Numbered from the stretch's first letter, positions 1,752 to 47,167 are shown. The stretch: DNA of 64,000 bases from Hyaloraphidium curvatum SAG 235-1 (GCA_025558095.1 JAIVFI010000019.1:496001-560000); one strand, 5' to 3'. Notes: generated by a model not told the origin, from the sequence alone. Program-made: numbers and translations.

Positions 1752-3698
1752 CTAGGCCTGCCTCGACATGGCGGCGGTCGGGGTCATGACCACGTCCGCG
1801 TTGCTGACCGAGTGCGCCGTGGCGAGGGTGTCGACCGACATCCTCCTGTCGCGGAACGACATCCGCCGCGGCTTCTCCTCGGGCGCCGCGAGCATCTCGG
1901 GCTTGGCCTCGGGCTTGGGCTCCTCCGGGGCCGGGGCGGGAGCGGGAGCGGCGGGCGCGGGCTTGCGGAAGAGGCGGTACCCCAGGAAGGCGAGCAGCGC
2001 GAGCAGCACGAGGCCGCCAATCACCCCGCCGACGATGGCGCCGACGTTGACGGACGAGGGCTCGGCGGCGGGAGCCGAGGTCGACGCGGCGCTGGAAGTG
2101 CCAGAGGGCTGCAGCGGGCCGACGGTGAAGGCGGCGGGGGCGGCGCATGACCGCACGGCCGGGTTGCTGTCCAGGCACACGGGGTCGTAGGCCGAGCGGT
2201 CGTACTGCCAGCAGAGGCCGCTGTCGGACGAGGCGAGGCGGCAGGTGGAGTAGCTGGGGCCGGTGTAGGCGAGGCCCTGGATCTCGCGCTTGAGCGGCGG
2301 CAGCGGGCCCGAGAACTTGGCGCCCGTCACGTCACTGCGGCCGCACGAGGCATGTCAGCAATGCACATCAGCCGCAGATGCAAAAGCAGCAACGCACATG
2401 CTGGCGAGGTTCGGGAGCCCCCTGAGGTCGGGAATCGGCCCCTCGAGGCTCGTGTTAGCGAGCCCGAACCCGAACAGGTCCGGCATCTCGGCCAGGAAGG
2501 CCGGGAAGGTGCCCGTGAGCCCGGCGTTGCCCGAGACCTGGAACTCGCGCAGCGCGGCGAGCTGCTTGAGCGCGTCCGAGCCGGCGTTGATGTCCCCCGT
2601 CAGGCCCGAGTCGCGGAAGAGCACCTTCTGGATGCCCCAGTCGGGTGCGCACGAGATCTGTCGCGTGCGGCGCACACGATCAGCCAAGCAAGATGCGACG
2701 CGACGGGGGACCGACCTCCTTGGTCAGGGGCTTGGTGTAGTCCATGATGGCCGGGCGCCACGACGGGCAGCACGCCGAGCCGGCGTCGGACCAGAGCTCC
2801 GACTCCTTGGCGCCGTGGGCGACGAGCCAGGTCTTGAGAACCTTGCACTGCGCCGCGGGCGGGATGGGGATGGCTCCTCTGTGGGTTCAGATGTGCCTTG
2901 GACGTCAACGACGAACACGCAACGAACTGCCATCGAACCCACCCGTAGCTCGGCCCGGTAGCACCGGGTTTGCCCGTGCTCGCCGGCACCTCGGGCGCCA
3001 CGAACGTCCCGGGCGGGCACGCGGCCTCGACCCCGCACCTGGCCTCGCTCGTCACGCAGGCGTCGCTCCCCTCGAGGTCGCACGTCGCGGGGACGGCGGC
3101 GGGCACGGCGCCCGACATCTTCGTGCGCGAGACGTCGAGGGTCGAGAGCTGCGGGAGGGCGGTCATGAGGCGGGGGAGGGGGCCGGAGATGGAGGTCGAG
3201 GAGAGGTTGCTGGGAGGGTAGAGGGTCAGCAGATGAGGGATGCGTGAAGTGATGGGGCCCACAGGTTGCGGAGGCCCTTGAGCTGGAACATCCACCCAGG
3301 AAACTCGCCCGTGAGGCGCGAGTTGCCGGCAAAGTCGATCACCTCCCAGCTTTCGGACACTTTGGAGAGCGAGTTGGTGCGGATGTCGCCGACGAGCTCG
3401 TTGGGGCCCCAGTAGAGGGCCTTGAAGGCGCCGGTGGCGTGGTCGCAGACAAGCTGGCGGTGCACGACGTCGTCTGCATCGAGGATGGAATGAGCGACGA
3501 GGATGGTGCGGGGCGCGCGCGCCACGCACCCGAGGCGTCGAACCCGCAGCACGGCGACGCCATGCTGTCCTTTGCCCAGGTGTCCTTGCGGTCGACGCCC
3601 AGGGCGGTCAGGAAGCTGTACAGCTGCATGCAGTCGCGGAAGTGCGACGGCGGCTCCGTCGTGCGCTCGATGAGGTTGGGGGCGTCCGCGGCCGACAT
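1752..3698 (-). CDS. LRR receptor-like single-pass membrane protein with two tandem LRRNT+LRR modules
   Basis: Plant-type LRR motifs (NSRLTGEFP, STSISGPLP, RTKMSGAVP, NAGLTGTFP, NTSLEGPIP). Cys caps SPCC and SACC, a Ser/Ala stalk, TM GAIVGGVIGGLVLLALLAFLGY and a short cytosolic tail. About 5 introns; the 5' end is uncertain. Confidence 0.75.
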
Positions 3699-5134
3699 GG
3701 CTGCGGTGCGGGTGTGCGGTTTGGGGAGCCGGTGTGCGTATCGAGGCGGCCTGCGCTCTCGACGATGACCCTATGAGGAGCAAAGGGCCGCGAGGTGCGA
3801 TGCGATGGAATTCCCGGGCCGAGAGCGGGCGATGGGCGAAGGGGGGTTGTGGCGGCAAGGGCATCCGGCGGCGGGGCGAGCGGGGCAGCCATCGCGGGGC
3901 GTGCGGGTGCGGGTGCGACGAATGAGCGACGTGCGACGGCGATGGCGGGCGTGGCGGGCGCGGGCGGGGCGGGGCGTTTGTCAGCGTGCGTCTTCGGTGA
4001 CTCGACGCGGCCCCCGGCGGCACGCGCCATCGCGGCCGGCCGCCGCGGGCAAAACGGCCGGCGCGCGAGCAGCAACCGTGCGGAACGCGCGGCGGCGCGC
4101 CGCGGGGCCCCAGCGGGCACACGGCCCCGGGGCGCTGCACGGCCGACGCGGCCCCCCGCGGGTCCGCCGCCCGCACCCGCCGGCGCCCGGCCGGCCCCGC
4201 CACGCCGTCCGCATCCTCGGCCCTTTGAAGCAGCACGCACCTGTGGCCGGCGGCCGGAGGGCAAATAGAAAGGTGGAGTGGTGTGGTGGACCAAGAAGCC
4301 TGGCTGGGGAGCGACGAGCTCGGGTTTCCGATTGGGGGTGAACCGAGTCCCCTGCCCACCGCTCGTCGCGGCGTCCGAATGCAACCGATCACCGCGTGCG
4401 GCCCTCAGAATGGATGGATGAAGCAGGTCGGTTGCCTCCGGGGGCCGTGTCTGCATCGCACAAGGTGATCGGGGCTGCCCCTTTTGCTGTGCAAACGGGC
4501 TCGGGGACCGCGCCGTCGATCGTATAGAGGAACGATGCGGGAGGAGCCGGATGCCGGCCGCGTCACTCCAATCTGACCGCCGGAATGCACCTCAACCGAC
4601 CGTCAGCGCCTCCAAGTGGCAGGACCCCTTCCCTCGAGCCCCGGGCCCTGCGCCGCAGCAGACGGCAGGGCCCGGTCGACAGAGGGCCTCCCTCCCCGCC
4701 GAGGGTGTCCTCAAGACGCTACAGAGAAACATTCAATTGTGCGCGGGGAGCCAAGCGCCACGGCTCGCGTCGGGGGGCCATTTGGCTCAAGAGGGCCCCA
4801 AAACCGGTCAGGGTCGGGACTGTCGGGGATCCGCCGTTGGGGGACCTCCGCCACGCCGCAGCGACTGGCCGGCCGCCTCGAGGCCACTCCTACCTTGCGA
4901 ACGGGCAACCCAAATGATGCGTTTGAAACGTGGCGCGAGTGCTTCACCGGCCTGCCTACGTGGCCTGCCTTGGATCAACGAACGGGGACGCCGCCGGCCC
5001 CGGCGGTGCTCGATCGATCGAACCCGGCGGTGCTACTGCACCACGTCGACGCCCAGGCGGCAGCCAGAACCTGCCCAGTCCTATGAATGAATATGTACTG
5101 CATGCGTGCCCGTAGTAGCCCCGCGCAAAGTTCC

Positions 5135-40301: not shown

Positions 40302-41857
40302 CTACAGGTAATCCTCGATCCCCAGCTCGTTCCTGTAGTCGTGCCCGCAGATGATCCTCGAGGTGTTGCGCCAGTTGTCGATCTGCGCCTGCTGCGCCCT
40401 GTCGACCGTCGCCTCGGCCTTGGGCACCTTGAGCAGCGACTCGAGGACCTCCCGCGCGATGTACTCCTGCACCGTACCGCTGTGCACCTGCGGCGGGAAG
40501 TACCGCGAGCGGGACGAGGCGTAGTGGACCGTGATGGACTTGCGGCACTCCTTGGTGCGGTTGAAGCCCGAGCCGTGGATGATCATCGGGTGGCTGCCAA
40601 ACGACGTCAGTGCCATGTCGAGCAAAAGACGAATCGCAATGAGACCCACAAGAAGATCGTGTCCCCGGGCGCCATCTCGGCAAACACAAGCTTCCTCTTG
40701 CCGCGTCCCTCCTGCTCGGCGTAGTCGCCCTCGCCCTTCCAAACGGCGTCGCGGGTCGTGTGGAACCCGGCGTTGCCCTGCATCCACCGCGGGACGTCGT
40801 GCTCCACGAGGCCTTCCTTGTGCGAGCCGGGGATGACGACGAGGCAGCCGTTCGCCTTGGTGACGTCGGTGAGGGCGGTCCAGCAGCCGACGGTGTAGTG
40901 CGGGCCGGTCCAGGGGAAGTAGGCATAATCCCTGACAAACAGTTTAGGCGGAGGTCGTGAGCAAGGGCGATTGGACTCACTGGTGGAGCGGGTGGATCGA
41001 GGTGTCTGCCCCGACATCCGGAGGCTGCAGGACGGTCAGCACCACCGGCAGCGGAAAAAAAGATTACTCACCTTGTTGATCTGCATGCTTTAGAATCGTC
41101 GCGGTGAGCTTCAGGAAGAGTCGGCGATCGATTGCGCCACTCACTGGTGCTGGCTCTTGACATCGGGCCCGGCGAAGCAGCGGGCCACCTTCACCAACTC
41201 CGGGTAACGAACCCATTCCATCTGCACATCGTCAAAAATGCCCTGGAGCTTGTAGACGCCGAACTCGGACTTGGCGTAAGACTGGGGCAGCTCCCCGGCC
41301 TTGACCTTCCGCAGCATGCCTGTCAATCCCCGAAGAAAGGTCGCAAAACAAGGCCGAGACGGTTCGTTGGCACAGTTCCAGAGCACCAGCTACCAAAAGT
41401 GCCCACCGATGTCGCGGATGACGCCCAGCCCGGGAGGGAAAGGAATCCGCTCCGCGACCAGGTCCGAGAAGTGCCCGTTGAGCTTGTCCACCAGCCAGCG
41501 GGGCACGATGCCCCTCTTGATGATGTAGCCATTCTGTAGAGCGACTCCGGATGAGCTGCAGGCCGCGGCAAGCCTCTAGGGGCACCCGCCTCCTCGTAGA
41601 ACTCCCGCTCCTCGGGTGTAAGAGCGTTGAACTCGGCGCACTGCTCGTCCAGCGTGTACTGCACGAAATGGGTCCCACTGAGTCTCCAGCAGAGCTTCGG
41701 AGGGACGTCGGCGCACCTTGAAGTGCGACTTGTTGCGGTAGGGCAACTGCTCGGGCTCCTGTGAGGCCTTTGTCGGGGACGGCCGCAGCAGGTCGCTGGG
41801 CCCCGAGATGTGGCCCTGCACGCTGGCGAGGCGAGCGCCGGCACCGGAAGACGACAT
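40302..41857 (-). CDS. PHYH: Peroxisomal phytanoyl-CoA dioxygenase (PhyH)
   Basis: PTS2-like RLASVQGHI near the N-terminus. HPLHQ|DYAYFP, WTALTDVTKANGCLVVIPGSHK, MAPGDTIF, HPMIIHGSG and RKSITVHYA. Many introns. Confidence 0.88.
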
Positions 41858-42054
41858 TGGGGGGGAAAACGGGGGCCCAAGTTCGGGAGACGGTGCGAGT
41901 GACTCGGCCTTGGTTGACCCGAGACCCGAGAGGTTTGGCGGCGCCAACTACAGTATGGCCGTTTCGGCAAAGCTTGCCTACCCTACCCGCGCGCGCGCTC
42001 CACACCGGACAGCCCCGAATTGGAATCGCCCGTGCACCCCGAGCTCGAGAACAA

Positions 42055-43119
42055 ATGCCGCCAATCCGGTGGAGAAGGTTCATATTTGTTGCTGCCTTCC
42101 ACCTGGCGTGCTCTAATGGAGCAAACAGAGTCGTCCGCTCGACACGGTCTCCTGTCGGAACCACTCGCGCCCTGCCTGACGCTTTGCGGTGGAGGATCAT
42201 TTGCAAATGGGCAGACGGCCAGCCAAAGGCGCAGATCGCACGGGAGCTTTTGGTTTCTCGTCGGAGCGTGGCCCGCGTCGTTACCTGCTTCACGACGTGG
42301 GGCTGCGTGACGAGCCCGCTCACCGGCCGCCGAGGACGCAAACGCCTTCTGAGCCCGGGCCAGGAGCAGCAAGTCGTAGACTTTGTCGTGGCAAACAACA
42401 CTCTCTACCTGGATCAGATCGTCTCGCGCGTCTCGGATGCCTATGGAGTACAGTTCTCCGTCAGTGCTCTTTGGGAACTCCTCCACCGGAACGGAATCAC
42501 CCGGAAGGTCGTCGAGACGGCGGCAAAGGAGCGCTGCGAATCACAGCGCATTGATTTCCAGCTGAGGATATCAAAGTACGACCCGCGAATGATCGTAGCC
42601 GTGGACGAATCAGGGTACAACGAGAACACGCTTATCCGCAAGTACGGCTGGGCTCCCATTGGGCTACGTGCGATTGCTTCCGTTCCGTTTGTGAGGGGCC
42701 AAAAGTACAGCATCCTGGCCGCTATGGACATGAAGGGCTACGTTGCTTGGCGCATTCAAGAGGGGTCAATCAAAGGGGCTGACTTTTGCGACTTTCTCGA
42801 GAAGGACCTCCTCCCACGCATTCCAACGTTCAGTGTCATCCTTCTGGACAATGCAAGCATCCACAAGGATCCGCGCATTCGTCCTCTCTGCGAGAGATTC
42901 GGAGTTTTCCTCGAGTTCCTGTCACCATACTCCCCGGACTTTGACCCCATTGAGCACTCCTTTTTTCACCTCAAGCAGCTCATGAGGAGGTACGAGGACT
43001 TTGTCAGGACGTTTCCAGACGCAAAGGACGCTATCAACTTCATGTGCACTCAGATTACTGAGGCCATGGCACGGGCTTGCTTCAAAGGGGCGGGATACCG
43101 CATTGACTTTGACTGCTAA
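42055..43119 (+). CDS. IS630/Tc1-like DD34E transposase
   Basis: HTH IARELLVSRRSVARV, GRKRLL and YLDQI. Catalytic VDESG and LLDNASIH, with 34 residues between the second D and the E of YSPDFDPIE. Confidence 0.93.
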   Translation: MPPIRWRRFIFVAAFHLACSNGANRVVRSTRSPVGTTRALPDALRWRIICKWADGQPKAQIARELLVSRRSVARVVTCFTTWGCVTSPLTGRRGRKRLLSPGQEQQVVDFVVANNTLYLDQIVSRVSDAYGVQFSVSALWELLHRNGITRKVVETAAKERCESQRIDFQLRISKYDPRMIVAVDESGYNENTLIRKYGWAPIGLRAIASVPFVRGQKYSILAAMDMKGYVAWRIQEGSIKGADFCDFLEKDLLPRIPTFSVILLDNASIHKDPRIRPLCERFGVFLEFLSPYSPDFDPIEHSFFHLKQLMRRYEDFVRTFPDAKDAINFMCTQITEAMARACFKGAGYRIDFDC

Positions 43120-43181
43120 ACGAGTACAGGGCTACTAATGTAACGTTGCGATTACTTGCAAATAACAGATGTTAAATTCGT

Positions 43182-45618
43182 TCACGAGTTGCTGTACAGA
43201 TCGGACCCGACCATGACAACATCTTTGGTGCGCTTCCCAGGGAGGCAGTACAAAGCAATGTGCCCTTCAACGGCGGGAACGTCGATGAGCTTCTGCTGGG
43301 GAGAAAGCATCTCGAAGGGGAGGAGGTGAAAGGTCATGGTCTTTTCCCCTGCAGGGTCCTGCCACTCAGCCTTGTGGTGATCTTTGAACTGGGGACACTT
43401 CGTGACGATGCTCCAGACGGTCTCGTCCCCAAGTAGTCTCTCCTTGGGCCACAACGGAGCTGATGCGGCAATCTCGCCGTCATCGTTGCGCTTGCTCAGC
43501 GAAACGGAGTAGGTCGGCTTGAAGTTGCCCATGGGGCCGTCGGGCGTAAAGGCCATAGGCTCAGTCACGCCTGCAATATGGAGATGCATCCAGATGGGTG
43601 TGAAAGACGCTGTACGCACGGTCGCACCTGGCGAGGGGCCCGCGTTGGGGGCAGCGAGGGGGCTCATGAACGGGTTCCCGTCATTCTGTTCTCGGGGGGC
43701 ACCACCAGTGCCCCAGTCCGGCTTGGACATGACAGGAACGGTCCTGGCAAGACCTTGCTTCCGAAGCGATGCCCGAATGGCGTCGAGAGCCGTCGTTCCG
43801 CCCGGGGGGTTTTCGAAGTCGACGTAGTCGGGGTCGGTCGGGGTCAAGCCTTTCTTTTCCGTCTCTATCTGAATTCGGTGTAAGCGTACAAGACAACGCG
43901 GTAAAGTAACGATACATACGGCCATCCGTACCCAATGATGGGAGTCCTGAAGGTCGAACTGGCCGTGGCACATGCCGTGCATCAGGAAACAGCGTGGGCC
44001 GTGAACCCGGGTCATCAGGTCCCCGACGTGCGTGTGGCCCCTCGTCTTGCACACGGGAATGTAGAGCTTGTTGAGCTTAGACAAACGATCGGGCAGGCTG
44101 GATGTTGTGCCAGCTGTTCCAACTTCTCTCCCACCAGTGACCTGCTCGGGCCACGGAAGTCTCGTCGACATAGACATAACCAGCAAAGACGCCGAATCCT
44201 ACCACACCGGTCGACGTCCCCAAGGGGTTGGCAGTCTGTGTGGCAGCCTGGACGGCGGCGGGGTCGAACAGGGGCGGGGCACCGAGAGCGCCGGCCTGGG
44301 ACAAGCCAAACGTGATGCCCTTGACCTCCACAATGTCGATTCCCGGAATGAGCTGACGCCGGCGCAGCAAGTTACGAAGCGCCTCGTCATCGGTAACGTG
44401 GCAGACATGCACGTCTTTGGGCTTTGTCGAGTTATGGTTGCCCGAGATGTAGGTGAGCAGAGGTGCCCCATCCGAGCGGTGCGGAACGAATACGCCGATG
44501 TGCCAATTGGGGCTATGGATCTGCTTGGCAGCTTGACCCTAGAACGCCGCGATGGTGATGCTGTCGATCGGCCCCAGATCGAGCTGGACGGTGGACATCG
44601 TAGAGCCCATCATCTTGGTGCCAGTTACAGCCGCAAACTTGACTGGAACATCGCATGTGAGCGTAATGCAAGAAAAAGCGCGATTGCTGCGATTCCACAC
44701 CCTCATAGACGGTAGCGAGCTCAGCCTTCTCCTTGGCCGTCAATGGCTTGGTCGGTTTCTCGTCTGCCTTCTTTCCTCCCTTCTTCCGCTTGGGCCCCCA
44801 TTCGAAGTAGGCGGCCTCCACGACCACGGACGACTCGCTCGAAGGGGTGGGCGGCGGTTTGGGCAGAGCATGGGTGATTCTGGACGGTGTGTCGTCGAGA
44901 GGTGCCGATGCCGGCTCGGATTCCTCGACAACCACGGCGGGCTTGGGTACAGTGCTCTGCGTCTGATGCTTCTTGCTCATGCGTGCTTTCTTCGGAGCCT
45001 GTTGGGAGCCATCTTCTGCGTGGTGGCTTGGGGATGGTAACGGTCGTGACGAATCACCATCCAGTGCCCACCTTTCCCTTGCTGGCAGCCCGAGCAAATC
45101 CAGCTCATGCTTTTGCCGGGCCTCTTGTTGATGCCGTTGCACCTTGTGTGCTGGTAAACCTTGCACTCGTCGCAATCGATCATGGGCTTGCCGTCGTCGA
45201 AGTCGTGCCCCTCGGCACCGCAGACGCACTTGAAATCCCAGCTCTCCGCGTCCGCGCTGTCGACGTCCTCATTGCTCGTAGTAGTGCCTTGTTTTCCTGA
45301 AGGGGAGGAGTGCTGTCAGTCCGGCTGCCTCCAGAATTCAAACGGGAACCGACCTGCAGCTCGGACTGCCTCGTAGCACGTCTTGCACACGGAGTGGTCG
45401 CCGGCCTGGAGCTTCTTCTGTCCCTTGATTCTCGTGCCGCAGACCTCGGCATTGTCACGGCTCAAGGTGATCCAGCGCAAGTAGTCGGAAGGGCGGCCGG
45501 CCTTCTGGAGCTTGGACTCGTGGGCGTCGCGCTGCCTGCAGTTCCTGTTGCAGACGACGCAATTGTCACATAGAGCGCATGAAATCTGAAACTTTTCCGG
45601 GTCCTGCGGAGGCGCCAT
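43182..45618 (-). pseudogene. Transposon cargo: multi-exon PHD-finger/Zn-binding protein with one in-frame TAG
   Basis: Exon 1 has CxxC..CxxC...CxxC. After intron 45297-45353 comes the PHD CVC...DDGKPMIDCDECKVYQHTRC...WICSGC. After intron 45016-45071 come NLS-like PKKAR and KRKK. TAG at 44539-44541. A later C..H...C...H cluster follows. Confidence 0.7.
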
Positions 45619-45833
45619 TGCCTTCTTCCGTGGGCTGGGGGGGGGGCAGATTCGAGGACGTTTGGTGCCTGAGTTTTGCGCGCGCGCGGGTGGGCAAGGT
45701 TTGGAGAAAGGGCAATATTACGATCGGTACCGCGGCCACCGCCAATCTGGCCCACAGCTGACCATTGCCCTACTCAACCAGGCCGTGACACCTCCGCGCA
45801 GACATTCACATCTGGTTCCCCGCGGAAAACCAA

Positions 45834-47167
45834 TTACAGACGACCCTGGATCTTGCCGGCCCTTCCGATCAGGCTGTGGTTGAGCCACGGGTTCCGCTCC
45901 ACCCCCGTGGTGCCAAGGAAGTTGTGCGGGAAGAGCAGAGGCTCCTTGGTCACCTCGTCAAGCTTGCGGAGCTCGTCTTCGGTGAGGACGACGTTGAGCC
46001 CGCCGAGATTGTCCTTCAGCTGGGCCACGGTTCGGCAGCCGATCAAGGGCGAGGTGATTCCCGGCCTGGAAAGCTCCCACGCAACGCAGACTTGGCCGGA
46101 GGTGCACCCCTTGGTGGCCGCGATCTCGCCGACGGCCTCGGCAATCGAGTAATCCCTGTCGCTCATCTGCACCGTTGACCGGGCGGCATCGGCGGGCTTG
46201 GGACCGCCGCGCTTGTATTTGCCCGTATACTTGCCCTGGCCGAGAGTGCCCCAGGGCACGATGCCGAGCCCCATCTCCATGCACATCGGAATGACATCCT
46301 GCTCCATGTTCCGATCGCCCATGTGGTAGCGGCCCTGATACGCGACGAACGGAGACCATCCGTGGAGATCGGCGATCGTGTTGCAGCGTGAGACTACCCA
46401 GGCGGGGGTGTCGGAGATGAGGGCGTCTGTTTCCTTCGCGTGAGGGATAGCAATGGCGCGACGCTGAGGAGCACTCACAGTGCACCTTGCCGGCGCGAAT
46501 CACATCGTCCATCGCGCGCATGATTTCCACGGGCTGCGTCGTAAAGTCCCACCAGTGAACGTAGAGGCAGTCCAGGTAGTGCGTGCCGAGGCGCTTCAGG
46601 CTCGTCTCGAGCGAGAACAGGAGGTTCTTGCGAGAGTTGCCGCCCCGGTTGATGTTGATGTCGGTCGAGTTGATCCGGCTCGGGGACGTGTACTTGGTGG
46701 CGATTATGATCTTGGAACGGGGAGATGTGAGCCAGAGACTGCCAGCAGAGCGTTTGGTCCGAACCCACGTCATCCCGGAGGTTCTCTTGGTTGCGGCGGC
46801 GTAGCATGTCGCCCAGCCATTGCTCAGAATCACCACCCTGGTCTGCAAAACGAGTCAGACAAGCCAAGGAAGGACTCTTGTCAGAATACTCGCAGCTGAC
46901 TGCAGTGTCTACGAAGTTCCCGCCCGCATTCACGTAGGTGTCGAATATCTCCGTCGCCGTCTCGAATGTGCACTCTCCCATCAGAGATTCCCAGCCTTTG
47001 CCCTGAATGTCGACTGCTGATGAGCATATGAAAGAGCGATGCGGACCTGGGCAGTAACACACGAAGTTCATGGCCCCGAGACACAGGGGCGAGACCCGGA
47101 CCGAGGCGCGCGGAGACAGGAGGCGGTAGTCCCGCAGGGTGGTCTTCTGGTGGGGATACGACGCCAT
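45834..47167 (-). CDS. Aldo/keto reductase (aryl-alcohol dehydrogenase/AAD-like)
   Basis: VRVSPLCLGAMNF, GGNFVDTA, IIIATKY, GNSRKN, YLDCLYVHWWD, ISDTPAWVV and PWGTLGQG. Confidence 0.92.

What the first reader, a model, noticed from the sequence alone, without database searches (positions are those of the whole stretch)
41951..45720. Two-gene IS630/Tc1 transposon: DD34E transposase tail-to-tail with a PHD-finger chromatin-reader gene inside the TIRs
Seen in sequence: an apparently intact DD34E transposase (+) and a multi-exon gene (-) converge, with stops about 60 bp apart. Both lie between imperfect inverted repeats (41951-41998 and 45678-45720; left end TA|CAGT). The interior is lower in GC than the host genes on either side. 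The second gene encodes a CxxC cluster, a PHD finger, NLS-like stretches and a further C/H cluster. Established: typical Tc1/mariner elements encode only a transposase. Multi-gene exceptions include ciliate TBE/Tec elements, and convergent transposase plus partner genes occur in ProtoRAG, while vertebrate RAG2 carries an H3K4me3-reading PHD. Inference: this may be an undescribed family whose accessory protein steers insertion by chromatin state or counters silencing.
Basis: partly seen in the sequence, partly recalled or inferred. Interest (0 to 1): 0.9.

Follow-up and report, generated by a model that had tools for sequence, protein, structure and literature searches.

The report
Two-gene Tc1-like transposon with PHD partner
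This is a real, recently active 3.76-kb cut-and-paste transposon that carries its transposase and a second, spliced, expressed and selectively constrained gene for a PHD-finger (histone-tail-reading type) protein. All 11 of its distant relatives that I sampled, five of them in named fungi, also carry a second gene, which makes this an unusual two-component branch of the Tc1/mariner world.

Summary
The element runs from 41956 to 45715 and is flanked by TA duplications at 41954-55 and 45716-17.

Three full copies, 99.5-99.8% identical, lie at unrelated loci with the same ends and TA duplications. There is also one decayed copy, one deletion derivative and a 540-bp MITE family of 8 copies.

An RNA-type run shows GT..AG splice joints for one transposase intron and all six introns of the minus-strand gene. 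That gives a 337-aa DD34E transposase and a 698-aa partner with a Cys cluster, a PHD finger, NLS-like stretches and an orphan 400-aa C-terminus.

The partner is constrained (pN/pS 0.26, p=2e-4; GC3 0.75). It has no host paralogue and no homologue in 1.8 billion proteins. The window copy and the C7 copy carry a TAG at codon 303; the copy at C2:393277 is intact.

All 11 sampled transposase relatives (30-39% identity) have a convergent, Pfam-less second gene. TIRs enclose both genes in 7 of the 8 loci for which DNA was returned. That second gene belongs to a different family from ours.

Multi-gene Tc1/mariner elements are already known (MarCry-1_FO, Fanzor carriers, TBE/Tec). I found no description of a PHD partner or of this clade. 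The partner's function, chromatin tethering being my best guess, is untested.

Other notes of this scan flagged the same element at another copy (s1-705510).

The parts
41954..41955 (.). Left TA target-site duplication
   Evidence: The flanks of the three full copies diverge immediately outside TA.
41956..41998 (+). Left terminal inverted repeat (starts TGGCCGTTTC, ends in a GC-dinucleotide run)
   Evidence: Inverted repeat I3. The same end occurs in the C7 and C2 copies and, with one mismatch in 28 nt, in the MITE family.
42055..43119 (+). Transposase gene: exon 1 at 42055-42077, in-frame 51-nt intron at 42078-42128, exon 2 at 42129-43119 including the stop. The product is 337 aa and DD34E (D167, D248, E283).
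   Evidence: Pfam DDE_3, HTH_29 and HTH_33. GT..AG joint 42075>42127 in run X3. Translation.
43120..43181 (.). 62-bp spacer between the two convergent stop codons
   Evidence: An X3 contig covering 42764-43223 bridges both 3' ends.
43182..45618 (-). Accessory gene, 7 exons: 45618-45354, 45296-45072, 45015-44701, 44642-44203, 44141-43920, 43868-43628 and 43570-43182 (stop included). It encodes 698 aa. The six introns are 51-61 nt, all GT..AG.
   Evidence: All six joints appear in run X3 and none in the DNA runs X1 and X2. The spliced frame is open apart from codon 303. GC3 is 0.72-0.81 in every exon against 0.54 in the introns, and pN/pS is 0.26.
45376..45579 (-). N-terminal Cys cluster (CxxCxxCxxCxxxC, then C60, H75, C78, C81), a putative zinc module with no family assignment
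   Evidence: Translation. Only a sub-threshold DUF4428 hit (E=0.03-0.045) and nothing in the PDB.
45085..45228 (-). PHD finger (C112-C159). Y136 and W154 align with two Trp residues of the TAF3 PHD.
   Evidence: Pfam PF00628 at E=1.5e-6, above its gathering score. The nearest solved PHDs are 1wee, TAF3, SHPRH, MLL5 and BPTF, with the alignment shown.
44539..44541 (-). In-frame TAG at codon 303 of the accessory gene in this copy
   Evidence: The window and C7 copies have TAG. The copies at C2:393277 and C2:525445 have TTG (Leu).
43182..44538 (-). Orphan C-terminal region (codons 304-698) with no detectable homologue or fold
   Evidence: For the last 334 codons: 0 hits in 1.84 billion representative proteins, ESM Atlas blank, AF2 pLDDT 35 and no metagenome relative. 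For every exon of the region: no Pfam family. Still constrained, with pN/pS 0.16.
45677..45715 (-). Right terminal inverted repeat (reverse complement starts TTGCCCTTTC)
   Evidence: The end is shared with the MITE family.
45716..45717 (.). Right TA target-site duplication

Best explanation
SHOWN. Window 41956-45715 is one copy of a young, autonomous, two-gene DNA transposon of the IS630/Tc1/mariner superfamily. The transposase is DD34E and the element inserts at TA. The two genes are transcribed inward from the two ends; each ATG lies about 100 bp from its terminus, and the genes end 62 bp apart.

The second gene is part of the element, not a neighbour. It is present in every full copy and absent from the rest of the genome. 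It is spliced at six introns, has strong coding composition, and has evolved under purifying selection.

The same transposase, or a near relative, very probably also moves a 540-bp MITE family that has almost the same ends.

INFERRED. The 698-aa partner is a nuclear cofactor of transposition, not a passive passenger. Its PHD finger binds the histone H3 tail; it is of the type that reads methylated H3K4, and aromatic residues are kept at two Trp-aligned positions. The Cys cluster and/or the orphan C-terminal domain contact the transposase or the transposon ends. Together these would tether the transpososome to open, gene-proximal chromatin.

This follows the logic of RAG1/RAG2, of the Harbinger transposase with its Myb-like partner, and of chromodomain integrases.

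My odds:
- about 0.95 that it is a genuine two-gene transposon with a functional second gene;
- about 0.55 that the partner is needed for, or modulates, transposition;
- about 0.3-0.35 that it acts specifically by reading histone marks to choose targets.
For: Mobility and unit boundaries. Three full copies at C19, C7 and C2 are 99.5-99.8% identical, with identical ends and TA duplications. A fourth, decayed copy and a deletion derivative exist. Eight MITE copies are 99-100% identical, with ends differing by 1-2 of 28 nt.

Transposase. Pfam DDE_3 and HTH domains and DD34E spacing.

Expression and gene model. There are eight canonical splice joints in run X3 and none in the DNA runs. They include all six introns of the partner and one intron in the host gene next door. 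One X3 contig joins spliced exon 1-2 of the partner to the flank of the intact C2 copy (with for that flank).

Coding and selection. GC3 is 0.75 against intron GC of 0.54. Between the intact C2 copy and the older C2:525445 lineage there are 17 synonymous and 15 non-synonymous changes, giving pN/pS 0.26 (binomial p=2e-4). The orphan C-terminal part scores 0.16 (p=0.002).

Not a host gene here. Protein searches of the whole genome with exon 4 and with the C-terminal part (exons 6-7) find only the element copies.

PHD. Pfam hit above threshold. The best solved relatives include the H3K4me3 readers TAF3, MLL5, BPTF and PHF13, and Y136 and W154 align with two Trp residues of TAF3. That those two Trp form TAF3's methyl-lysine cage is from my memory.

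A second gene is the rule in this branch. All 11 sampled relatives of the transposase have a convergent second gene. TIRs enclose both genes in 7 of the 8 loci with DNA. This argues that a second protein is useful to this kind of element.
Against: No experiment or binding data exist; the function is inference.

Two of the three copies with intact transposases carry a stop at codon 303 of the partner, and that allele has moved at least once. The full-length partner is therefore not needed in cis. It may be supplied in trans by the C2 copy, or not be needed at all.

The key cage tryptophan of canonical H3K4me3 readers is a tyrosine here.

The partner shows no detectable similarity to the second-gene family of the relatives (hhalign E>0.1). 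Continuity of function across the clade is therefore assumed, not shown.

In the transposase tree this element branches beside the group holding all sampled two-gene relatives, not inside it, and that node has weak support (SH-aLRT 81).

A crude look at insertion sites shows intergenic positions near genes but no clear promoter rule.

Run X3 is only guessed to be RNA by its record. Over most of the transposase body, the contigs listed carry the variants of the decayed copy.
Confidence: 0.55

Rival explanations
1. Passenger gene. The PHD gene was captured by the transposon (transduplication or exon shuffling from some earlier host). It rides along without any role in transposition. It may do something for itself or for the host, or nothing.
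For: No similarity to the second-gene family of the related elements, as expected for a swapped-in cargo. Mariner elements that share the transposase and TIRs but differ in their 3' cargo are documented (PMC3627910). The allele truncated at codon 303 has still spread to a second locus.
Against: pN/pS is 0.26 over the whole gene and 0.16 over the orphan domain, so the protein has been kept working while the family diversified. There is no host parent copy in this genome and no homologue anywhere searched. The position and orientation match exactly those of the second gene in all 11 sampled relatives.
Confidence: 0.2
2. End-binding or nuclear-import cofactor without chromatin reading. The partner works like the Myb-like protein of PIF/Harbinger or MURB of MuDR. 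It brings the transposase into the nucleus or onto the TIRs, and the PHD serves only as a protein-protein or DNA-binding zinc module, as the PHD-like Cys-rich domain of piggyBac does.
For: Two NLS-like basic stretches lie in exon 3, plus two zinc-type modules. A second gene is general in this branch even though the other family has no PHD. The convergent two-gene layout resembles MuDR (my knowledge).
Against: The transposase has its own HTH DNA-binding domains, and Tc1/mariner transposases usually act alone (established knowledge). The PHD aligns best with histone-tail readers, not with DNA-binding Cys-rich domains.
Confidence: 0.15
3. Anti-silencing factor. The partner protects the element from the host's chromatin-based silencing, as VANC of VANDAL21 does in Arabidopsis. 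It would do so by binding histone tails at its own copies.
For: The PHD is of a histone-reading type. The element and its MITEs are young and apparently active. Convergent transcripts ending 62 bp apart could generate double-stranded RNA that would need countering.
Against: Nothing in the sequence points to sequence-specific recognition of the element's own copies. There are no data on chromatin or small RNAs. The truncated allele is common.
Confidence: 0.08
4. Artefact. A single-gene Tc1 element happens to lie next to a host PHD gene, and the inverted repeats are chance matches.
For: The TIRs are imperfect, and many equally good short inverted repeats occur in the region.
Against: Three copies on three contigs share the whole 3.76 kb, end at the same bases and are flanked by TA with unrelated sequence outside.
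Confidence: 0.02

Closest known systems
MarCry-1_FO of Fusarium oxysporum (Mariner/Tc1 element fused with a Crypton; Kojima and Jurka 2011, PMC3212892)
   Same: A fungal Mariner/Tc1-type element with short TIRs and TA duplications. It carries a second protein gene besides the DDE transposase and is present in a few near-identical copies.
   Different: Its second protein is a Crypton tyrosine recombinase with a GCR1_C domain. Ours is a PHD-finger protein with no recombinase signature in Pfam.
Fanzor-, endonuclease- and methyltransferase-carrying Mariner elements (Bao and Jurka 2013, PMC3627910)
   Same: Related Mariner elements share TIRs and the transposase half but differ completely in the 3' cargo half. 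This matches the relation between our element and its relatives. Earlier notes of this scan report Tc1-Fanzor elements in the same genome (s1-704291 and others).
   Different: The cargo there is a nuclease or a methyltransferase. No PHD or chromatin reader is described, and many of those elements are virus-borne.
Unnamed two-gene Tc1-like elements found here as relatives (Lipomyces tetrasporus, Paramyrothecium foliicola, Sparassis crispa, Phenoliferia, Collybiopsis and metagenome contigs). Their second gene is annotated as 'hypothetical protein', also in Pyrenophora tritici-repentis and Alternaria.
   Same: DDE_3 transposase 30-39% identical to ours. Elements of 3.1-4.1 kb. The second gene lies tail-to-tail immediately after the transposase. 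TIRs enclose both genes.
   Different: Their second protein forms one family of its own, with a WRCxxxxC...CW...H.P motif. It has no PHD and no detectable similarity to ours. Three of these elements (L054, L055, L062) show TACAGT- or TACAAT-type ends, whereas ours begins TGGCC.
RAG1/RAG2 and ProtoRAG (Transib superfamily)
   Same: A transposase gene and a convergent partner gene. Vertebrate RAG2 has a PHD finger that reads H3K4me3 and couples cleavage to active chromatin (established knowledge).
   Different: A different transposase superfamily (Transib, not IS630/Tc1) and no sequence relation between the partners. This is an analogy of logic only.
PIF/Harbinger (transposase plus Myb-like protein) and MuDR (mudrA/mudrB)
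   Same: Cut-and-paste elements that need or carry a second protein. MuDR's two genes are also convergent and are driven from the two ends (my knowledge).
   Different: Other superfamilies, other target duplications (TAA or 9 bp), and other partner domains.
Ciliate TBE/Tec elements
   Same: Members of the IS630/Tc1 group with a DD34E transposase and additional ORFs (PMC7325037).
   Different: They have three ORFs, about 700-bp TIRs, germline-limited ciliate biology, and partners that are a recombinase or a zinc-finger/kinase protein.

Membership tests
IS630/Tc1/mariner superfamily | RNase-H-like DDE/D catalytic domain with characteristic spacing | tested here: met
   Pfam DDE_3 at E=3.7e-21. 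D167, D248 and E283 give 34 residues between the second D and the E.
IS630/Tc1/mariner superfamily | N-terminal paired-like helix-turn-helix DNA-binding region | tested here: met
   HTH_29 at E=2.4e-7 (above its cut-off). HTH_33 at E=1.7e-5 and PAX at E=7.5e-4 are both just under their cut-offs.
IS630/Tc1/mariner superfamily | TA target-site duplication | tested here: met
   TA on both sides of 3 full copies and of 5 of the 6 MITE copies found with both ends.
IS630/Tc1/mariner superfamily | Terminal inverted repeats at the shared boundaries of the copies | tested here: met
   About 40-nt imperfect TIRs; the 22-nt core is 86% complementary. They sit exactly at the copy boundaries.
Tc1 family in the narrow sense | Termini beginning CAGT after the TA | tested here: not met
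The ends read TA|TGGCC and TA|TTGCC. Relatives L054 and L062 do have TACAGT.
Two-gene Tc1-like clade found here (unnamed) | A convergent second gene between the transposase and the right TIR | tested here: met
   Same layout in all 11 sampled relatives and in this element.
Two-gene Tc1-like clade found here (unnamed) | The second protein belongs to the WRCxxxxC...CW family (alignments A3 and A4) | tested here: not met
   hhalign of A3 and A4 against exon 1, exon 4 and the C-terminal ORF gives probability below 1% and E>0.1. Positive controls L063 and L085 match at E=5e-7 and 2.7e-4.
Two-gene Tc1-like clade found here (unnamed) | The transposase nests inside the clade in a tree | tested here: inconclusive
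   Quick ML tree rooted on this genome's other Tc1-type transposases. Ours branches beside the 45-row group that holds all sampled two-gene relatives, not within it (SH-aLRT 81).
PHD finger (PF00628) | C4HC3 zinc-binding signature scoring above Pfam's threshold | tested here: met
   28.6 bits against a cut-off of 24. The Cys/His pattern spans C112-C159.
H3K4me3-reading PHD subclass | Aromatic cage residues and demonstrated binding to methylated H3K4 | tested here: inconclusive
   Y136 and W154 align with two Trp residues of TAF3, which by my memory are its cage residues. One cage Trp is therefore Tyr here. Binding cannot be tested with these tools.
MarCry-type composite (Mariner plus Crypton) | The second protein is a tyrosine recombinase with a GCR1_C domain | tested here: not met
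   No integrase or GCR1_C hit in any exon at E up to 10. This is a weak test, because Crypton recombinases are poorly covered by Pfam.
PIF/Harbinger two-gene elements | DDE_4-type transposase, TAA duplication, Myb/SANT partner | tested here: not met
   The transposase is DDE_3, the duplication is TA, and the partner has no Myb domain.

The most novel reading that the evidence does not exclude
A large, so far unrecognised branch of Tc1/IS630 transposons, seen here in named fungi and in metagenome contigs, is two-component by rule: a convergent second protein is needed for transposition. In this lineage the ancestral second gene has been replaced by a histone-tail-reading PHD protein that directs where the element lands. 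That would be an independent reinvention, inside the Tc1/mariner superfamily, of the RAG1/RAG2 logic of a transposase plus a convergent PHD partner reading H3K4 methylation.
Probability: 0.2. Interest if true: 0.85.

Novelty: new variant of a known kind. Interest (0 to 1): 0.66.

Why it matters
Tc1/mariner elements are the textbook case of a transposon that needs only its own transposase, and they integrate almost at random at TA. That randomness is both their strength and their weakness as gene-transfer tools.

Here the second gene is conserved in position across 11 sampled relatives, five of them in named fungi. In this element it encodes a chromatin-reader-type protein that is expressed and under selection. 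That would mean some members of the superfamily have a built-in cofactor.

If the cofactor biases integration towards particular chromatin, it offers three things:
- a natural, compact model for targeted cut-and-paste insertion;
- a living parallel to the RAG1/RAG2 partnership;
- a way to ask how two-component transposons arise.

The system is small and tractable. It has a 337-aa transposase, a 698-aa partner, a natural truncated allele, and a 540-bp MITE that can serve as a reporter.

Independently of function, the finding shows that TE annotation by 'TIR plus transposase domain' misses a whole class of transposon-borne proteins. These are now filed as hypothetical host genes, for example the multi-copy family in Pyrenophora tritici-repentis.

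Tried and rejected
1. C-terminal 334-aa ORF (43185-44186, minus strand): exhaustive HMMER against 1.84 billion representatives gave 0 hits. The ESM Atlas feature search gave no usable hit. The metagenome scan found no relative. AF2 without an alignment gave pLDDT 35, which is unusable, so no fold search was run on it.

2. Every exon of the partner against Pfam at E up to 10, and exons 1 and 4 against PDB sequences: only the PHD hit. My early idea of a metallophosphatase, from the GNH and GHTH motifs, is not supported by any hit and is dropped.

3. Homology between our partner and the relatives' second-gene family: tblastx and hhalign with 5- and 18-sequence profiles were all negative.

4. A 43%-identical transposase relic at C2:577319-578178 as a possible bridge. 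It also has a convergent gene that starts with a CxxCxxCxxC cluster, but BLASTP against our exon 1 is blank. Its match to the second-gene motif is not significant (E=0.06-0.3).

5. A host paralogue as the source of capture: none found. The weak hit at C1:1217237 (E=8e-4) lies in an unrelated reading frame context and is taken as chance.

6. Insertion-site rule: a crude scan for coding ORFs around 9 insertion sites shows mostly intergenic sites near genes but no consistent side or distance. No claim is made.

7. Empty sites and polymorphism: the two DNA runs are thin and break at the repeat boundaries, so they say nothing.

8. Organism: not identified. The neighbouring aldo-keto reductase has mainly unnamed or bacterial best hits. 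I therefore call the host a GC-rich eukaryotic microbe. Five of the sampled relatives of its transposase are from named fungi.

9. Complex prediction was not used. The spliced proteins may not be sent joined, the partner has no alignment depth, and I do not claim binding as shown.

Full report
1. WHAT IS THERE

The region is GC-poorer (0.51-0.60) than its flanks (0.62-0.66). It holds a + strand ORF with Pfam DDE_3 (E=3.7e-21) and winged-helix/paired-type HTH domains. It also holds a minus-strand set of ORFs, one of which carries a PHD finger above Pfam's threshold.

A DNA search of the window's own 32-Mb assembly with 41951-45720 found the whole stretch three times at 99-100% identity: C19 (the window), C7:451846-455610 and C2:393277-397031. 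A fourth copy at C2:525445-528782 is 98% identical and lacks the first about 410 bp. A deleted and rearranged relic lies on C4.

Aligning the copies with their flanks shows that similarity starts and stops at the same bases, with unrelated DNA outside and TA on each side. The element is therefore 41956-45715, 3,760 bp, with ends TA|TGGCCGTTTC... and ...GGGCAA|TA.

The TIRs are imperfect and about 40 nt long; the core found by the repeat tool is 22 nt at 86%.

In the window the element sits between the 3' end of an aldo-keto-reductase gene and a minus-strand host gene. That gene's start codon I read at 41858, about 95 bp from the insertion (read directly from the sequence; it agrees with note s1-719694).

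2. A MITE FAMILY WITH THE SAME ENDS

The last 170 bp of the element matched several other loci at 73% identity. These belong to a 540-bp element with 8 copies that are 99-100% identical. Of the six copies found with both ends, five have TA duplications on both sides and one reads TA/TG.

Its left terminal 28 nt differ from the element's by one base and its right terminal 28 nt by two. Its right part is homologous to the partner gene's 5' UTR and first codons.

This says two things. The transposase, or a close relative, is or recently was active in trans. And the 5' end of the partner gene was already inside an older, about 27% diverged relative of the element.

3. GENE MODELS AND EXPRESSION

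One public run (X3) is recorded only as 'RNA?'. Laid on 41600-46000, it shows eight skips with canonical GT..AG ends. The two DNA runs of the same organism show none. The skips are:
- one in the host gene on the left;
- one in the transposase (42078-42128, 51 nt, in frame);
- six in the minus-strand gene.

Three of these introns I had predicted from the sequence beforehand. With these joints the transposase is 337 aa, with D167, D248 and E283 (DD34E). The partner has 7 exons and 698 codons.

The partner encodes, in order:
- a Cys cluster (C14 to C27, then C60, H75, C78, C81);
- a PHD finger (C112-C159);
- two basic NLS-like stretches within a Pro/Ser-rich linker;
- about 400 residues with no recognisable domain.

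One X3 contig carries the spliced exon 1-2 junction and runs on into the flank of the C2:393277 copy, so that copy's partner gene is transcribed.

Two caveats apply. Logan contigs cannot give strand or level. And over most of the transposase body the listed contigs carry the variants of the decayed C2:525445 copy.

4. STATE OF THE COPIES

| Copy | Transposase | Partner gene |
|---|---|---|
| C19 (window) | intact | TAG at codon 303 (44541-44539) |
| C7 | intact | TAG at codon 303 |
| C2:393277 | intact | intact (TTG, Leu, at codon 303); 10-bp deletion inside intron 1 |
| C2:525445 | multiple frameshifts | multiple frameshifts |

Because the TAG allele is present at two loci, it has transposed, or been converted, after it arose. 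The full-length partner is therefore not required in cis.

5. IS THE SECOND GENE A REAL, CONSTRAINED GENE?

Yes, on four counts.
- GC3 is 0.72-0.81 in each of the seven exons, against 0.48 at second codon positions and 0.54 in the introns.
- Between the intact C2 copy and the older C2:525445 lineage there are 17 synonymous and 15 non-synonymous differences over 481 and 1,607 sites. That gives pN/pS 0.26 (one-sided binomial p=2e-4).
- The orphan C-terminal part alone gives 8:4, pN/pS 0.16 (p=0.002).
- The substitutions are not RIP-like; only 30 of 48 are transitions.

The caveat is that one partner of the comparison is now a pseudogene, so the ratio mixes constrained and neutral time. This makes the estimate conservative.

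6. WHAT IS THE SECOND PROTEIN?

The PHD is most like PHDs of 1wee (a plant PHD protein), TAF3, SHPRH, MLL5, BPTF, PHF13 and ASH1L. In the HMMER alignment with TAF3, our Y136 and W154 align with two Trp residues. From memory, these are the two that form TAF3's cage for trimethyl-lysine. One cage position is thus conservatively changed, which agrees with note s1-719337.

Everything else is unassigned:
- no Pfam family for any other exon at E up to 10;
- nothing in PDB sequences for exons 1 and 4;
- 0 hits for the last 334 codons among 1.84 billion representative proteins;
- nothing in the ESM Atlas or in JGI metagenome contigs;
- an unusable AF2 model.

In the organism's own genome, exon 4 and the C-terminal part (exons 6-7) occur only in the element copies. 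There is no host parent gene here.

7. THE RELATIVES

The transposase has no close relative in 5.8 billion protein clusters. The best hits are 30-39% identical 'transposases' or hypothetical proteins. The named ones come from Lipomyces, Entrophospora, Sparassis, Paramyrothecium, Phenoliferia and Collybiopsis; the rest come from metagenome or run assemblies.

I looked up the contigs of 11 of them, spread over ranks 2-67. In every case the gene immediately downstream is convergent, 270-634 aa long and without any Pfam domain.

DNA was returned for loci of ten of them. I scanned eight loci for inverted repeats, and in seven of those, inverted repeats of 27-200 nt enclose both genes, giving elements of 3.1-4.1 kb. 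Three of them (L054, L055, L062) show TACAGT- or TACAAT-type ends.

The second proteins I compared form one family with a shared Cys motif:
- five align directly;
- two more match the profile, at 92% probability with E=5e-7 and at E=2.7e-4;
- two further ones (Sparassis, Phenoliferia) show only a looser form of the motif by eye.

A profile search finds more members, annotated 'hypothetical protein', in several copies in Pyrenophora tritici-repentis and also in Alternaria, Ophiobolus, Clathrospora and Stemphylium.

An AF2 model built on 18 sequences has three confident parts: a beta-grasp-like domain, the Cys-motif domain and a helical C-terminus. It has no significant PDB match; the best Foldseek E-value is 0.03.

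Our partner shows no similarity to this family by tblastx or profile comparison.

In a quick ML tree rooted on this genome's other Tc1-type transposases, our transposase branches next to the group containing all two-gene relatives, not inside it, and the support is weak. Those outgroup transposases are the ones other notes of this scan describe as Fanzor-linked.

The layout is therefore shared, but the second gene is either replaced or diverged beyond recognition.

8. HOW IT MOST LIKELY WORKS

Shown: this is a TA-specific cut-and-paste element whose two genes are read inward from the ends.

Inferred: the second protein is a nuclear cofactor. Its PHD docks on histone H3 tails. Another part, either the Cys cluster or the constrained orphan domain, contacts the transposase or the ends, so that integration is tethered to a chromatin state.

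Three things favour a role in transposition over a passenger:
- purifying selection on the partner;
- the absence of any host copy;
- the fact that a second gene in this exact place is the rule among the relatives.

Three things weigh against a strict requirement:
- the spread of the truncated allele;
- the self-sufficiency of ordinary Tc1/mariner transposases;
- the lack of any direct test.

Rivals, with my odds, are a pure passenger (0.2), an end-binding or import cofactor without chromatin reading (0.15), an anti-silencing factor (0.08) and an artefact (0.02).

9. COMPARISON WITH WHAT IS KNOWN

Multi-gene members of the superfamily are on record:
- MarCry-1_FO: Mariner plus a Crypton recombinase, TA duplications, 16-bp TIRs, four copies (PMC3212892).
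- Mariner elements with Fanzor, endonuclease or methyltransferase cargo, which share the transposase half and differ in the 3' half (PMC3627910).
- Ciliate TBE/Tec elements (PMC7325037).

Full-text searches combining Tc1 or mariner, fungi, second ORF, PHD finger and cargo turned up no description of a PHD-carrying Tc1/mariner element. They also turned up no description of the convergent second-gene family. That library lacks most subscription journals and Repbase, so 'not found' is not proof of novelty.

I rate the finding as a new variant of a known kind. It is a member of the IS630/Tc1/mariner superfamily by every defining feature tested. It is not a narrow-sense Tc1 (no CAGT ends). By layout it belongs with the unnamed two-gene branch, but not by the family of its second protein.

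10. LIMITS

The host organism was not identified. Only the within-genome version could be run.

The spliced proteins were never sent joined to any search or fold tool. Exons and natural ORFs were used by reference, and the joined sequence existed only in local scripts for translation and counting.

Noticed in passing
L070-L077 (G000: C10:619665, C6:614774, C6:358782, C2:520230, C2:454528, C21:299268, C4:405949, C10:620184): A 540-bp MITE family with 8 copies 99-100% identical and with termini almost identical to the element's. Of the six found with both ends, five have TA on both sides and one reads TA/TG. Two copies on C10 lie head-to-head, and a fragment lies on C31. This is a likely natural reporter for the transposase.
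   Followed up: partly
L054-L063, L083-L085; proteins P0082-P0120: The relatives' convergent second gene forms an uncharacterised, Pfam-less protein family with a WRCxxxxC...CW...H.P motif. It is multi-copy in Pyrenophora tritici-repentis and Alternaria and is annotated as a hypothetical host protein. The AF2 model shows a beta-grasp-like domain, a Cys-motif domain and a helical tail, with no significant PDB match.
   Followed up: partly
G000:C2:577319-578178 and L060:4498-6200: A broken transposase 43% identical to ours. Its convergent neighbour starts with a CxxCxxCxxC cluster and has an NLS-like stretch and a long acidic tract, but no PHD. It may be a second, older two-gene element in the same genome.
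   Followed up: partly
window 43120-43223: The stop codons of the two genes are 62 bp apart, and one RNA-run contig (42764-43223) bridges both 3' ends. The convergent transcripts may therefore overlap and could form double-stranded RNA.
   Followed up: no
G000:C7:451846-455610 (L002): This copy is flanked on both sides by the same 16-nt host sequence (GGCTACGTACACACCC) just outside the TA. It is either a local host repeat or a longer duplication at the insertion.
   Followed up: no
G000:C4:555774-557763 (L005-L007): An internally deleted and rearranged copy. It keeps element positions about 6-190, 2961-3197 and 3403-3734, with about 1.2 kb of other DNA between the last two pieces.
   Followed up: no
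window 42362-43223 in run X3: The RNA-run contigs over most of the transposase body carry the substitutions and frameshifting deletions of the decayed C2:525445 copy, and a different upstream sequence joins at 42362. That broken copy therefore seems to be transcribed from outside.
   Followed up: partly
window 45834-46478: The neighbouring aldo-keto-reductase exon has mostly bacterial named homologues (Gemmatimonadota and others, about 50% identity) and only unnamed hits at 79% or lower. This may point to a horizontally acquired gene or an under-sampled lineage.
   Followed up: no
G000: C7:376194, C6:418436, C6:611019, C28:412380 and others (L025-L040): At least 15 loci have long open frames (783-933 aa) whose DDE region is 28-29% identical to this transposase. 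Other notes of this scan describe them as transposase-Fanzor fusions. I used two of them only as a tree outgroup.
   Followed up: no
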